From contig CM097887.1 of assembly GCA_044892525.1 (NCBI GenBank), positions 138,796,397 through 138,860,396 of the forward strand: a stretch of DNA of 64,000 bases. The letters are read 5' to 3'. The notes under the pieces are model-generated. The model was not told the origin of the DNA. It was given only the letters and a program-made list of their open reading frames with translations, and made no database searches. How positions within the stretch are numbered: the first letter of the stretch is position 1; each line of letters starts with the position of its first letter. Positions 45,271 to 55,332 of the stretch are shown piece by piece. The position numbers and the translations under genes were made by a program. Source of the stretch: Schmidtea polychroa (Eukaryota).

Positions 45271-48200
45271 TCATAATTGCGACATCAGTACTCCATCGTA
45301 AGCCCTTATGGCTTGTCTAAAATATAGCTTGGTCCAAATACCCATAGCTATCAGTGTAGTTACTAGCGATAGTACGGCTGATACCGTAATCCATACCCCT
45401 ATGGGTACTTTCAGGATATATCCTGTATTAAAGTTTGTGATGGCATTACAATCACAACAGTTTGTCAAGTTTGGAGTCGTTGGACAAGATATTTGTTTGA
45501 TCGGTGGCAACTGTCTAAGATGTTGCCACATCGTGGGATGTATCACCATGTTTTCTCTAACTACTTTTGGGGGTATTTCCGTTATTACTGGCTGTTTCAA
45601 AGGTAATATCTCCTCGAATACCTCGAACCACCTATCGTCCTCCCGTTTCCTCGGACTATAGTATATAACTAGAACCGAATATTCTACTGACTGATTTAGA
45701 TACCTTTCTTGGGAGGGAGAGTTCTGGTCTAACCATAATGTTCCTCTCGTGGATGATCCGTCTAGAATGCTGATTTTCACCTTCTCCTCCCTGTTAATTC
45801 GCTGACTAAACTTTACTTTATCCCTTCCGTAGGATATCGATATGCGATTTGTGAAATCCGCCGTCCGTAGGATCCAATTTGATACGTGATAGGTATACCA
45901 ACCATTCCGATATAACCTTGATGCTGCGATATGCAGTTTATAATCCGTCTCGGCTTTTAGGTCATATAATTCCCACTCTTTTTCTTCTGAATCGAGCTGG
46001 CGGACCCGTAAGTACTTGTTGTAGAAATGTAAATTGAACTTTGTAGCATTATCGCACGTTGTGAGTATGCTAATTCCATGATACGTTCTTATAAAATGTA
46101 GGTGTTCCACCTGCATAGCCATCGGCTGAAAATAGGCCTTTCTATCCCTTTTTGCCATTGCCAAAGTCATCATACAGCTTATTATCAGCAAAAAGGTTAC
46201 CGATTTTGGAACACCCCTTGATCTCAATGGGTATCGGTGTTCTTGGGGTTCTTCGGTAGTGTTTGGTTTCACTTGTTTATCTGGTGCTTTTACTTTTGGG
46301 TTTCCAGAGGCTCCCTTTGTTGAGATTTCGCACTTTTTACACCGATTAGCATGCACCATTATTGGTTCTGCTTTTCTGTTGGCCACCAATTGTAATATGA
46401 GATTTGTATCCGTGGTTCTCAATACCTCATATGGCCCTTTGAAATTTCGCATGAGTTTTGGTGATAAGCCTTTCTTGTTATAATGACTTTCCAACATCAC
46501 CTGGTCTCCAACCAATATGCCATGATCCTTGGCTTTTCGGTCATGATAATCTTTGGATGCCTCCTGATTATATTTTATACTGAGGCCTGCTCTAGCCCAT
46601 GCTTCCTGCATTCTTTCCCGCATTTCCATTAGATAATCTTGCTGATCCAAGTACTGTGTTGCTTTAGGAAAAAACAACAGATCTACTGGCATTTTACTTT
46701 GTCTCAAATACATTAGGTAAAATGGTGTTTCACCTGTTCCTTCGTGTACTGCATTTCTATATGCAAATAAACAGGATGGAATGTGGATATCCCAATCCGT
46801 TTGTCCTGAATTTACATATGATGCTAACATATTAGCTAATGTTCCATTAAATCGCTCTACTAACCCATCCGTCTGTGGGTGATATGGGGAAGTGTTCAAC
46901 TTTAAAACTCCGAAATAATCATTTATTCCTTTGAGCAAATTACTCATGAAATCAGCTCCCCGATCCGTTAATAGCTTCGTAGGTACTCCATACCTAAAGA
47001 CAATTTGTTCAACGAAAATTCTAGCTATCGTATCAGCTTTGTGATTAGGCACCGGGTAGGCTTCTGGCCACTTAGTCAAGTAATCACAGAACACTAAGAT
47101 GTACTTGTTTCCGCTATTGGATTCTTTAAATGGCCCCAACACGTCCATTGCCGTCATTTCCATAGGTGTAGATGGTACTGGCATCGGCTTCATTGGCACG
47201 TGTGGTTTCTTTCCGGTATTTCTTCTGGTGATACAGATCTTACATGTCTGACACCAGGTTTTAACCTCTTGTTTCATGCTGGGCCAAAAATATTTTTGTT
47301 TTAACCTTGACAATGTTTTTCTGGATGACAGGTGGCCTCCTAAGGCTCCATCGTGATACTGCAACATGAGTGCTTCACGGTATTTCTTAGGGACCATTAC
47401 AACATTGTCTCTTACATCTGAATATTTGACTAATCCTTCCTCCAGCACAAACTTGTCCTTATTCTTTTCCCAGTATTTCGTGAATTCTGTGGGCACGTAT
47501 TTCGCTTCTAAGGCTTGTCGAATGACATTGATTTCTTCGTCAGCTTTTTGTGCCTCCATTAAATCAGCTAGCCGGTTGGCTTCTCGAGTCAGTGTGAAGA
47601 TAGTCCCTTCGAGACGTCCTTCCTTCACATCTTCTGCTTCCTCCTCCTGGTCCATTCTCGATAAAGCGTCTGCATTTCCATTATGATCTCCTTTTCTATA
47701 ATGAATTTCTATGTCATATGGCTGTAAAATTAATGCCCATCTGACCAGTTTTGATGTATCCATTGTGTGTTTCGTCAACCACTGTAATGGTCTATGATCG
47801 GTATACACTATGATCTTTCGACCCCATAGATAAGTCCTAAACTGGGTTATAGCATACACAATTGCTAAAGCTTCTAGTTCTATTACTGCGTAGTTTCTTT
47901 CGTGCGGTTTTAATCCTCTGCTAGCGTATGCAATTGCATACTCATCTCCTAGGTCATCTCTCTGACCTAACACAGCACCTATGCCCCGAGTGCTGGCATC
48001 TGTCATAACCAAAAATTGTCTCTCAAAGTCTGGAAATCGCAATATAGGTGGATTGATGAGTTTTTCCTTGAGCATATCAAATGCTTCTTGCTGTTCTGTT
48101 CCCCACACAAATTTGACATTTTTGCCTTCTAACTGCGTGAGTGGAAAAGCTATAACCGAAAAGTTTCTAATGAATTTTCTGTAGTATCCAACTAGACCTA

Positions 48201-55332: not shown

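What the first reader, a model, noticed from the sequence alone, without database searches (positions are those of the whole stretch)
45271..55332. Retrovirus-like element with Env inside a single Gag-Env-Pol polyprotein
Seen: one stop-free 3353-aa ORF in which a ~620-aa glycoprotein (internal signal at ~aa 1016, Cys-rich ectodomain, C-terminal TM) lies between Gag and the protease (catalytic Asp at ~aa 1880). Established: its motifs match chuvirus/herpes gB-type class III fusogens, and env-bearing metaviruses and retroviruses normally carry env as a separate ORF after pol, expressed by splicing. Inference: the polyprotein is threaded through the ER as in flavi/alphaviruses, with Gag and Pol cytosolic and Env luminal, released by signal peptidase and the element's own protease. 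That would fix Gag:Env:Pol at 1:1:1 and may define an undescribed lineage of infectious gypsy elements.
Basis: partly seen in the sequence, partly recalled or inferred. Interest (0 to 1): 0.95.

Follow-up and report, generated by a model that had tools for sequence, protein, structure and literature searches.

The report
Gypsy element with mid-polyprotein envelope gene
This is a young, intact retrovirus-like gypsy element whose envelope protein, borrowed long ago from chuvirus-like RNA viruses, sits between Gag and Pol in one giant reading frame; the sequence facts are right, but this gene order is already described in invertebrates, so it is a new member of a known group.

Summary
Window 45271-55332 (-) is one stop-free ORF of 3353 aa. 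It reads Gag (four CCHC knuckles), about 690 aa of unknown function, a class III fusion glycoprotein, a linker, then PR-RT-RNaseH-IN.

The glycoprotein matches Pfam Monjiviricetes_fusion at E 1e-85. Its model (pLDDT 84) hits chu-like virus glycoproteins (E 1e-39) and herpesvirus gB (E 6e-15).

The ORF lies in a 14.7-kb LTR element: two 988-bp LTRs with 3 mismatches, a PBS and a PPT. Pol is Ty3/gypsy type.

The order is not an assembly artefact. At least twelve divergent metagenomic relatives carry G in the same ORF as Gag, as PR/RT/IN, or as both.

The novelty claim fails. GAG-ENV-POL gypsy elements with gB-type Env are published for Nematoda, Bryozoa and Platyhelminthes. A single Gag-Pol-Env polyprotein is known from Atlas virus.

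Processing and the 1:1:1 stoichiometry remain untested.

The parts
55432..56419 (-). 5' LTR (988 bp)
   Evidence: It differs from 41693-42680 at 3 of 988 positions. Its inner end reads ...CA and is followed two bases later by the PBS. Its outer boundary is ambiguous by a few bases.
55411..55428 (-). Primer-binding-site-like sequence starting TGG
   Evidence: Read directly, two T residues after the LTR end. The tRNA partner was not identified; there are no tRNA genes in the window.
45271..55332 (-). Single 3353-aa ORF: Gag, unknown region, G, linker, PR-RT-RH-IN, C-terminal membrane module
   Evidence: The order is collinear with P0001 over Gag, the middle region, G and PR-IN.
54343..55332 (-). 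Gag-like region (aa 1-330) with four CCHC zinc knuckles
   Evidence: Pfam zf-CCHC. CCHC motifs start at aa 199, 226, 246 and 286. PDB hits are to retroviral nucleocapsids. It is 42% identical to the N-terminus of P0001. The capsid fold itself was not tested.
52288..54342 (-). Middle region of unknown function (aa 331-1015)
   Evidence: No Pfam or PDB sequence match. It is 25-31% identical to the equivalent parts of P0001 and P0003. Its two moderately hydrophobic stretches are not conserved as such in P0001.
50383..52287 (-). Class III fusion glycoprotein G (aa 1016-1650): signal-like segment 1014-1030, ectodomain, TM 1581-1610, Cys-containing basic tail
   Evidence: PF24664 at E 1.4e-85. AF2 model pLDDT 83.9. 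Foldseek hits chu-like glycoproteins and gB. There are 14 invariant Cys among close relatives and 11 among 65 relatives.
49753..50382 (-). Low-complexity basic linker (aa 1651-1860) between the G tail and the protease
   Evidence: No Pfam hit and no similarity to relatives. It holds the only R-x-K/R-R site of the polyprotein, on the predicted cytosolic side.
49456..49752 (-). Retropepsin-type aspartic protease (aa 1861-1959; D-S-G-A at 1880)
   Evidence: Pfam gag-asp_proteas and RVP; motif position.
48292..48765 (-). Reverse transcriptase (aa 2190-2347)
   Evidence: Pfam RVT_1 at E 2.5e-32. The best solved relative is Ty3 Gag-Pol 7q5b at E 4.5e-117.
47716..48105 (-). RNase H (aa 2410-2539)
   Evidence: Pfam RT_RNaseH and RT_RNaseH_2.
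46876..47394 (-). Integrase: H2C2 zinc domain and catalytic core (aa 2647-2819)
   Evidence: Pfam Integrase_H2C2 and rve.
45274..46212 (-). Post-integrase membrane module (aa 3041-3353): signal-like segment 3041-3061, a 243-aa stretch with 5 Cys and 3 N-x-S/T sites, TM 3305-3334, 19-aa basic tail
   Evidence: The same layout follows IN in P0001, P0002, P0009, P0018 and the L003 ORF, although the sequences share no detectable similarity. There is no Pfam or PDB match. The single-sequence AF2 model was uninformative.
42985..45147 (-). ORF2 (720 aa), a conserved accessory gene with a degenerate RNase T/DEDDh exonuclease-like domain and an N-terminal hydrophobic segment
   Evidence: It is 26% identical over 362 aa to the L003 downstream ORF (E 2e-23) and 27% over 152 aa to the L001 downstream ORF. 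Both of those hit PF00929 RNase_T. There is a weak PDB hit to ISG20L2. The acidic residues of the first two exonuclease motifs are not conserved in the window copy.
42698..42707 (-). Polypurine-tract-like run just upstream of the 3' LTR
   Evidence: Read directly.
41693..42680 (-). 3' LTR (988 bp)
56419..56513 (.). Flanking direct repeat outside the 5' LTR; its partner is at 41602-41696 outside the 3' LTR
   Evidence: The 95-bp repeat is 99% identical between copies and was read. It is far longer than an integrase target-site duplication and is unexplained.

Best explanation
The locus is a recently inserted, apparently intact Ty3/gypsy (Metaviridae) endogenous retrovirus-like element, about 14.7 kb from 41693 to 56419. 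It belongs to the already described GAG-ENV-POL type. Its envelope gene is a chuvirus-like (Monjiviricetes) class III fusion glycoprotein placed between gag and pro.

Shown:
- The domain order.
- The unbroken reading frame.
- The fold of G.
- The LTR, PBS and PPT frame.
- The recurrence of the same order in divergent relatives.

Inferred mechanism:
1. The genomic RNA is translated as one chain.
2. Gag and the middle region are made in the cytosol.
3. The internal signal (aa 1014-1030) takes the nascent chain to the ER and the G ectodomain is translocated.
4. The anchor at aa 1581-1610 stops transfer, so the basic G tail, the linker and PR-RT-RH-IN stay cytosolic.
5. A second signal-like segment after integrase (aa 3041-3061) translocates a small 243-aa module.
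6. A final anchor (aa 3305-3334) leaves a 19-aa cytosolic end.
7. Signal peptidase would cut on the luminal side of both signals. The element's aspartic protease would cut the cytosolic junctions.

Class III fusogens need no priming cleavage, and no furin-type site is conserved in the ectodomain. ORF2, downstream of pol, is a lineage-conserved exonuclease-like accessory gene and not an env.
For: ORF and domains.

Element frame: LTRs with 3 mismatches in 988 bp, plus PBS and PPT.

Ty3/gypsy Pol: 7q5b at E 4.5e-117, Ty3 RT 4ol8 at E 2.6e-88, Pfam RT_RNaseH and Integrase_H2C2, order PR-RT-RH-IN.

G identity: PF24664 at E 1.4e-85; model pLDDT 83.9; BFVD hits to chu-like glycoproteins at E 1e-39; PDB gB at E 6e-15; 1420 relatives at E<=1e-3.

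Same order in one ORF elsewhere:
- P0001: Gag-G-PR-RT-RH-IN.
- P0002, P0009, P0018, P0019 and the 3419-aa L003 ORF: G-(PR)-RT-RH-IN.
- P0003 and P0006: Gag-G-PR.
- P0007 and P0017: G-PR-PR.
- P0005: Gag-G.

These relatives are only 27-45% identical in G, come from ENA, JGI and NCBI records, and keep 14 Cys.

Topology:
- Hydrophobic segments occur in signal/anchor pairs around G and again after IN, in the window and in five relatives.
- Basic residues follow both anchors.
- The start Met and signal of related, mostly free-standing glycoproteins align with Met1016.
- No 2A-like motif and no conserved furin site are present.

GC and GC3 are roughly even across the segments.

Literature: the GAG-ENV-POL order with gB-type ENV in Nematoda, Bryozoa and Platyhelminthes (PMC13524379).
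Against: - No transcript or protein data exist here, so translation as a single chain, the cleavage sites and the stoichiometry are all inference.
- The G anchor is a 30-residue hydrophobic stretch followed by a second, weaker hydrophobic patch. If it crossed the membrane twice, Pol would be luminal.
- Topology rests on a simple hydropathy scan, not a trained predictor.
- Some relatives have G or Pol as separate ORFs: P0004 with P0160 on one contig, P0006 with P0157, and P0003 with the next ORF of L002. A fully fused frame is therefore not universal in the lineage.
- The ectodomain has only one N-x-S/T sequon.
- The element is flanked by a 95-bp repeat instead of a 4-6-bp target duplication.
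- The host, and hence the phylum, was not identified.
- Placement among the published GAG-ENV-POL clades was not tested.
Confidence: 0.62

Rival explanations
1. The gene order is real, but expression is retrovirus-like and not flavivirus-like. Alternative splicing gives a Gag-Pol message lacking G, a G message, or both. The long continuous frame then serves only one isoform, and Gag, Env and Pol are not made 1:1:1.
For: Met1016 aligns with the start codon of related, mostly free-standing glycoproteins, so a message starting there would be translatable. Some relatives keep G or Pol as separate ORFs.
Against: Frame continuity across both junctions is kept in many relatives that are only 27-45% identical. 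That would be unnecessary if G were always removed or separately expressed. A message starting at G would still run into PR-RT-IN in the same frame. No splice prediction or transcript data could be obtained here.
Confidence: 0.25
2. The element is a genomic fossil or a co-opted copy. The frame is open only because the insertion is recent, and G no longer serves particle entry. It might, for example, be a host-retained fusogen or a receptor-blocking protein.
For: Only one copy lies in the 64-kb window. Solo chuvirus-like glycoproteins proposed as host-domesticated are reported in mosquitoes (PMC7642597). ORF2 has lost conserved acidic residues of its exonuclease motifs. The flank structure is atypical.
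Against: All domains, both LTRs, the PBS and the PPT are intact. The LTRs differ at 3 of 988 positions. The 14 ectodomain Cys, the signal and the anchor are conserved with relatives at 38-45% identity, which indicates long purifying selection on G within elements. G is not isolated from the retroelement genes.
Confidence: 0.1
3. The G block between gag and pro is an assembly chimera or a nested insertion of an unrelated endogenous viral glycoprotein gene.
For: The window has assembly gaps elsewhere. The element has an odd 95-bp flanking repeat. G has slightly lower GC3 (0.32) than its neighbours (0.36-0.39).
Against: The same order and frame occur in at least twelve independent contigs from different projects. 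There are no N runs inside the element, no repeats or extra LTRs bracket G, and the frame is unbroken over 10 kb.
Confidence: 0.02

Closest known systems
GAG-ENV-POL 'errantiviruses' (Ty3/gypsy with HSV/gB-type ENV) of Nematoda, Bryozoa and Platyhelminthes (Chary & Hayashi, eLife 2026, PMC13524379; nematode elements first reported by Sacco et al. 2022, J Gen Virol 103:1739)
   Same: Ty3/gypsy Pol, a class III (gB-type) envelope gene, env placed between gag and pol, LTRs with a tRNA-type PBS, and intact young copies.
   Different: The papers I could read speak of three ORFs. They do not say whether the ORFs are fused, and they mention no post-integrase membrane module or exonuclease-like ORF. 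Sacco et al. is not held, so its details could not be checked. The host phylum of the window is unknown, and no phylogenetic placement was made.
Atlas virus and related hookworm belpaoviruses (Merchant et al., Sci Adv 2022, PMC9094657)
   Same: An intact LTR element encoding one stop-free polyprotein that includes its envelope protein, acquired from a negative-strand RNA virus.
   Different: Atlas is BEL/Pao, not Ty3/gypsy. Its order is Gag-Pol-Env, with Env at the C-terminus. Its Env is a phlebovirus Gn-Gc with a class II fusogen, not class III.
Anakin: mosquito BEL/Pao elements with chuvirus-derived glycoprotein (Dezordi et al. 2020, PMC7642597)
   Same: A glycoprotein of the same Jingchuvirales-type class III family captured by an LTR retroelement.
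   Different: The backbone is BEL/Pao and the host is an arthropod. That paper describes env-like genes of BEL/Pao elements as lying downstream of the polyprotein. The window's G is only about 20-28% identical to free-standing G proteins.
Glycoproteins of Jingchuvirales (chuviruses) and other Monjiviricetes; herpesvirus gB
   Same: Pfam family PF24664. The predicted fold is closest to chu-like virus glycoproteins (TM-score up to 0.60) and more distantly to gB. It shares the signal-ectodomain-anchor layout and 11 invariant Cys with 64 relatives.
   Different: Those are free-standing genes of RNA or DNA viruses. Here the protein is an internal segment of a reverse-transcribing element's polyprotein.
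Bdelloid rotifer LTR retrotransposons with enzymatic ORF3 (Rodriguez, Kenefick & Arkhipova 2017, PMC5408684)
   Same: An extra ORF downstream of pol encoding a DEDD-superfamily 3'-5' exonuclease-like protein rather than an env.
   Different: The rotifer ORF3 is DEDDy (RNase D-like). Here the relatives' ORF matches RNase_T, PF00929, and the window copy lacks conserved acidic residues. The rotifer elements have no internal env.
Flavivirus and alphavirus structural polyproteins
   Same: The proposed working principle is the same: alternating signal and stop-transfer segments thread one chain through the ER membrane, with host signal peptidase and a viral protease sharing the cleavages.
   Different: There is no sequence or fold relationship, so this is an analogy only. 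The fusogens there are class II, and the replicase lies in a different arrangement.

Membership tests
Ty3/gypsy (Metaviridae) LTR retroelement | Two long terminal repeats in direct orientation bracketing the coding region | tested here: met
   988-bp LTRs at 41693-42680 and 55432-56419 with 3 mismatches.
Ty3/gypsy (Metaviridae) LTR retroelement | Pol domain order PR-RT-RNaseH-IN with Ty3-type RT/RH/IN sequence | tested here: met
   Pfam order PR 1861-1959, RT 2190-2347, RH 2410-2539, IN 2647-2819. The best solved match is Ty3 Gag-Pol 7q5b at E 4.5e-117.
Ty3/gypsy (Metaviridae) LTR retroelement | PBS next to the 5' LTR and a polypurine tract next to the 3' LTR | tested here: met
   A TGG-initiated 18-nt PBS-like sequence lies 2 nt after the LTR. 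A purine run lies upstream of the 3' LTR. The cognate tRNA was not identified.
Ty3/gypsy (Metaviridae) LTR retroelement | Short (4-6 bp) target-site duplication and TG...CA LTR termini | tested here: not met
   The LTR ends in CA, but its outer start is not TG in the shared sequence. The flanks carry a 95-bp direct repeat, not a 4-6-bp one. This concerns this insertion's history or assembly, not the element's family.
Ty3/gypsy (Metaviridae) LTR retroelement | Gag with capsid and nucleocapsid | tested here: inconclusive
   The nucleocapsid is clear, with four CCHC knuckles. No capsid family or fold was detected or modelled.
Class III viral fusion glycoprotein (Monjiviricetes G / gB type) | Sequence membership in the family profile | tested here: met
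   PF24664 scores 288 bits against a cut-off of 27, E 1.4e-85.
Class III viral fusion glycoprotein (Monjiviricetes G / gB type) | Class III fold | tested here: met
   AF2 model pLDDT 83.9. Foldseek probability is 1.0 to chu-like glycoproteins (E 1e-39, TM-score up to 0.60) and to gB (E 6e-15). TM-scores to gB are low (about 0.36), as expected for multi-domain proteins modelled in a different conformation.
Class III viral fusion glycoprotein (Monjiviricetes G / gB type) | Type I membrane layout (signal, ectodomain with conserved disulfide Cys, C-terminal anchor) | tested here: met
   Hydropathy segments at 1014-1030 and 1581-1610. Fourteen Cys are conserved in close relatives and 11 in 65 sequences. 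No trained signal-peptide or TM predictor was available.
Class III viral fusion glycoprotein (Monjiviricetes G / gB type) | Trimerisation and membrane-fusion activity | not testable with these tools
Published GAG-ENV-POL errantivirus group | gB-type env located between gag and pol of a Ty3/gypsy element | tested here: met
   against the definition in PMC13524379.
Published GAG-ENV-POL errantivirus group | Host in Nematoda, Bryozoa or Platyhelminthes, and POL clustering with those clades | not testable with these tools
   The host was not identified. Exact look-ups failed, and the closest Pol in the protein collection is 48-53% identical and unnamed. The published element sequences are not held.
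Belpaoviridae single-polyprotein elements (Atlas type) | BEL/Pao-type Pol and a phlebovirus-like class II Env at the C-terminus | tested here: not met
   Pol is Ty3 type. Env is class III and internal. Only the trait 'env within one stop-free polyprotein' is shared.

The most novel reading that the evidence does not exclude
This lineage may encode, in one chain, two separately translocated membrane modules: the class III G between Gag and PR, and a fast-evolving small type-I membrane protein after integrase, in the position where env normally sits. It also has a conserved DEDDh exonuclease-like ORF. None of the papers I could read describes this combination. If the chain is really translated whole, it would be a reverse-transcribing element that uses a multi-pass, flavivirus-style polyprotein topology, possibly with a two-component envelope.
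Probability: 0.3. Interest if true: 0.6.

Novelty: new member of a known kind. Interest (0 to 1): 0.4.

Why it matters
The locus is a clean, young and complete example of a retroelement that took its entry protein from a negative-strand RNA virus and placed it in the middle of its polyprotein. It is useful for annotation, because automatic pipelines and even MAG binning mislabel such ORFs; one relative is filed under a Flavobacteriaceae MAG. It also bears on how envelope capture happened in invertebrate retroelements. The fused frame, the second membrane module after integrase and the conserved exonuclease-like ORF add detail to a published group and give concrete junctions to look for in transcript and proteome data. 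It does not open a new class of element.

Tried and rejected
- Host identification failed. Exact-sequence look-ups of the polyprotein and of ORF2 found nothing. Cluster look-ups of ten relatives gave no organism except a mis-binned bacterial MAG label. The Pol search gave no relative above 53% identity.
- Sacco et al. 2022 could not be read, and no other held paper discusses it. What it says about ORF fusion is therefore unknown to me.
- The supplementary tables of PMC13524379 are not held.
- The post-integrase tail, the middle region, the linker and ORF2 gave no Pfam hit even at E 5. The tail and the middle region gave no PDB sequence hit.
- AlphaFold on the tail without an alignment gave pLDDT 38 and was discarded. 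No alignment could be built because the relatives' tails share no detectable similarity.
- A sequence-only PDB search with G found nothing meaningful. Only the fold search did.
- The IMG/VR scan found no relative, and the metagenome scan added two loci.
- I considered a 2A-type self-separating motif or a furin site as the way to free G. Neither is present or conserved.
- I considered that the two hydrophobic stretches in the middle region are membrane spans. I rejected this because they contain charged residues and prolines and are not hydrophobic in P0001.
- I considered that the 95-bp flank repeat is part of the LTR. I rejected this because it lies outside both LTRs in the same order.
- The alignment tools printed consensus lines of their own accord.
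Full report
OBSERVATION

The minus strand of the window carries a single ORF at 45271..55332. It is 3353 aa long, starts at ATG and has no stop. With the ORF's own base composition, a stop-free run of this length has a chance of about 1e-105.

Pfam places the domains in this order:
- CCHC zinc knuckles. The motif scan finds four, at aa 199-299.
- PF24664 Monjiviricetes_fusion, E 1.4e-85, 288 bits against a cut-off of 27.
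- Retropepsin, aa 1861-1959. The only D[ST]GA motif is at aa 1880.
- RT, aa 2190-2347.
- RNase H, aa 2410-2539.
- Integrase zinc domain and core, aa 2647-2819.

A hydropathy scan finds a signal-like segment at aa 1014-1030 and a strong anchor at aa 1581-1610 around a 550-aa ectodomain with 14 Cys.

THE ELEMENT AROUND THE ORF

The ORF lies between two 988-bp direct repeats, 41693-42680 and 55432-56419, which differ at 3 positions. On the coding strand the upstream repeat ends in CA. Two bases later comes an 18-nt sequence starting TGG, a primer-binding-site-like sequence. A purine run precedes the downstream repeat.

The element is about 40% GC in a host background of about 28%. GC and GC3 are roughly even across Gag, the middle region, G, the linker, Pol and the tail, with G slightly lower.

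Pol is of Ty3/gypsy type. The best solved relative is the Ty3 Gag-Pol polyprotein (7q5b, E 4.5e-117, aligned from RT to IN), then Ty3 RT (4ol8). The locus is therefore a young, complete LTR element of about 14.7 kb.

THE GLYCOPROTEIN

An exhaustive HMMER search of 1.84 billion representatives with aa 1016-1700 found 1420 relatives at E<=1e-3.

I aligned the window's G with 64 relatives, most of them about 650 aa and free-standing. Eleven Cys are invariant and three more nearly so. The relatives' start Met aligns with the internal Met1016. The internal hydrophobic segment therefore corresponds to the N-terminal signal peptide of free-standing G proteins.

AlphaFold2 on this alignment gave mean pLDDT 83.9.
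- Against predicted viral structures, the best matches are glycoproteins of chu-related and chu-like viruses (E 1e-39 to 1e-37, TM-score up to 0.60). Xinmo-, rhabdo- and nyavirus-like glycoproteins and gB follow.
- Against solved structures, the top fifty are all herpesvirus gB (best E 6e-15, probability 1.0).

A sequence-only search of the PDB found nothing, so the gB link is structural only.

IS THE ORDER REAL?

A word-indexed search restricted to long proteins, the exhaustive search and a metagenome scan returned many long ORFs with G embedded. Pfam scans give these layouts:
- P0001 (3181 aa): Gag-G-PR-RT-RH-IN.
- L003 ORF (3419 aa, contig cut at the 5' end): G-PR-PR-RT-RH-IN.
- P0002: G-PR-PR-RT-RH-IN.
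- P0009 and P0019: G-PR-RT-RH-IN.
- P0018: G-RT-RH-IN.
- P0006: CCHC-G-PR-PR.
- P0003: a Gag-like N-terminus by BLAST, then G-PR.
- P0007 and P0017: G-PR-PR.
- P0005: Gag-G.

These relatives are only 27-45% identical to the window in G. They come from ENA, JGI and NCBI records. The window ORF is collinear with P0001 through Gag, the middle region, G and Pol.

A misassembly or a private nested insertion is therefore excluded for practical purposes.

The fused frame is common but not universal. On some contigs G, or Pol, is a separate ORF: P0004 with P0160, P0006 with P0157, and P0003 followed by a second ORF on L002.

First, the polyprotein does not end with integrase. After IN come a second signal-like segment (aa 3041-3061, preceded by basic residues), a 243-aa stretch with 5 Cys and 3 N-x-S/T sequons, a strong anchor (aa 3305-3334) and a 19-aa basic end.
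- The same layout follows integrase in P0001, P0002, P0009, P0018 and the L003 ORF: hydrophobic segment, 216-375 aa, anchor, short tail.
- The sequences nevertheless share no detectable similarity.
- No family, solved structure or usable model was obtained for it.
- It sits where env sits in canonical elements.

Second, ORF2 (42985-45147, 720 aa) is not an env.
- It is homologous to the ORF that follows pol on L003 (26% over 362 aa, E 2e-23) and on L001 (27% over 152 aa).
- Both of those match the RNase_T exonuclease family.
- P0001's contig also has a 585-aa ORF in that place.
- In the window copy the acidic residues of the first two exonuclease motifs are not conserved.
- Only the window copy has an N-terminal hydrophobic segment.

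An exonuclease ORF3 downstream of pol has a precedent in bdelloid rotifer LTR elements, of the DEDDy type (PMC5408684).

HOW IT MOST LIKELY WORKS

The domain order and the frame are shown. The rest is inferred.

The hydrophobic segments come in pairs, a signal then an anchor, around G and again around the C-terminal module. Each pair returns the chain to the cytosol. Both anchors are followed by clusters of basic residues, as the positive-inside rule expects for a cytosolic side.

Gag and the middle region are made in the cytosol. G is translocated co-translationally. PR-RT-RH-IN stay cytosolic. The small C-terminal module is translocated last.

Small residues at -3 and -1 follow both signal-like segments (read), which is compatible with signal peptidase. 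The cytosolic junctions would fall to the element's own protease.

There is no 2A-type motif and no conserved furin site. The lack of a furin site fits a class III fusogen, which needs no priming cleavage (established knowledge).

Weak points:
- The G anchor is 30 residues long and is followed by a weaker hydrophobic, Cys-containing patch.
- The scan is a plain hydropathy window, not a trained predictor.
- Nothing here speaks to splicing, to cleavage sites or to protein ratios.

I put the identity of the element at about 0.95 and the single-chain threading mechanism at about 0.5.

RIVALS

The main rival is retrovirus-like expression by alternative splicing (0.25). The conserved frame continuity across both junctions argues against it, but only transcripts can decide. 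A fossil or co-opted copy (0.1) is made unlikely by the intact frame, the near-identical LTRs and the long-term conservation of G features inside elements. An assembly chimera (0.02) is contradicted by the relatives.

COMPARISON WITH WHAT IS KNOWN

Chary & Hayashi (eLife 2026, preprint 2023; PMC13524379) surveyed env-carrying Ty3/gypsy elements across animals.
- They state that those of Nematoda, Bryozoa and Platyhelminthes carry only HSV/gB-type ENV and are arranged GAG-ENV-POL.
- They state that these elements do not form one clade.
- They credit the nematode cases to Sacco et al. [quoted passage not shown]
- They also note that the Chuviridae-like glycoprotein of mosquito BEL/Pao elements is structurally gB-like and occurs next to gypsy POL genes in arthropods.

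Merchant et al. [quoted passage not shown] Dezordi et al. (PMC7642597) describe chuvirus glycoprotein capture by Pao elements.

The order, the type of fusogen, its RNA-virus origin and the idea of env inside one polyprotein are therefore each published. The papers I could read do not say whether the GAG-ENV-POL elements are fused into one frame. They mention neither the post-integrase membrane module nor the exonuclease-like ORF. I could not read Sacco et al..

VERDICT

- Novelty: a new member of a known kind. Its closest relatives in the databases are 45% identical in G and about 50% in Pol.
- Interest: 0.4.

The most novel reading still open is that this lineage threads one chain through the membrane four times to deliver two luminal modules, and also carries a conserved exonuclease-like gene. 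I give that a probability of 0.3.

No gene of the window element is broken. I built no repaired, consensus or joined sequence and did not use the consensus lines that the alignment tools print.

Noticed in passing
window 41602-41696 and 56419-56513: A 95-bp direct repeat (99% identical) lies immediately outside both LTRs, where a 4-6-bp target-site duplication is expected. There are a few bases of microhomology at the junctions. It could be an unusual insertion or repair event, or an assembly effect of a heterozygous insertion.
   Followed up: partly
window 57567-58178 (+): A fragment of eukaryotic large-subunit rRNA (Rfam RF02543, 380 bits) covers model positions 2389-3399 in only 612 nt, about 1 kb from the element's 5' LTR. 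It is an internally deleted rDNA-derived piece outside any visible rDNA unit.
   Followed up: no
window 9140-13799: A protein-primed-type DNA polymerase B fragment (PF03175, E 1e-10, 11064-11675 minus strand) lies next to an ORF with a BIR/IAP domain (PF00653, E 9e-12, 13332-13799 minus strand). A 200-bp inverted repeat (9140-9339 / 13090-13288, 98%) is also here. Together they suggest remains of a Polinton/Maverick-like element or a DNA-virus-derived insertion. Related PolB-like pieces lie at 4308-4468 and 40493-40849.
   Followed up: partly
window 33894-34580 (+): An ORF with a parvovirus-type phospholipase A2 domain (PF08398, E 2e-7). It is probably an endogenous parvovirus/densovirus capsid fragment.
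   Followed up: partly
window 14895-15669 (+): Two adjacent short ORFs carry an integrase core (PF00665, E 7e-9). They are the remnant of another, decayed retroelement or DNA transposon.
   Followed up: no
window 42985-45147 (-); L001 9547-11622; L003 10617-12107: The ORF downstream of pol is conserved in this lineage and is RNase_T/DEDDh exonuclease-like in the relatives. The window copy lacks conserved acidic motif residues and has gained an N-terminal hydrophobic segment.
   Followed up: partly
protein P0009 (NCBI HBK71150.1): A 2627-aa G-PR-RT-RH-IN polyprotein of this eukaryotic retroelement lineage is deposited as a hypothetical protein of a Flavobacteriaceae metagenome-assembled genome. 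This is most likely a binning contaminant.
   Followed up: no
L002 9624-16787: In one relative the ORF after Gag-G-PR encodes RT-RH-IN followed by ankyrin repeats and a further retropepsin domain. Several other relatives have two protease domains after G. The region between G and RT is variable in this lineage.
   Followed up: no
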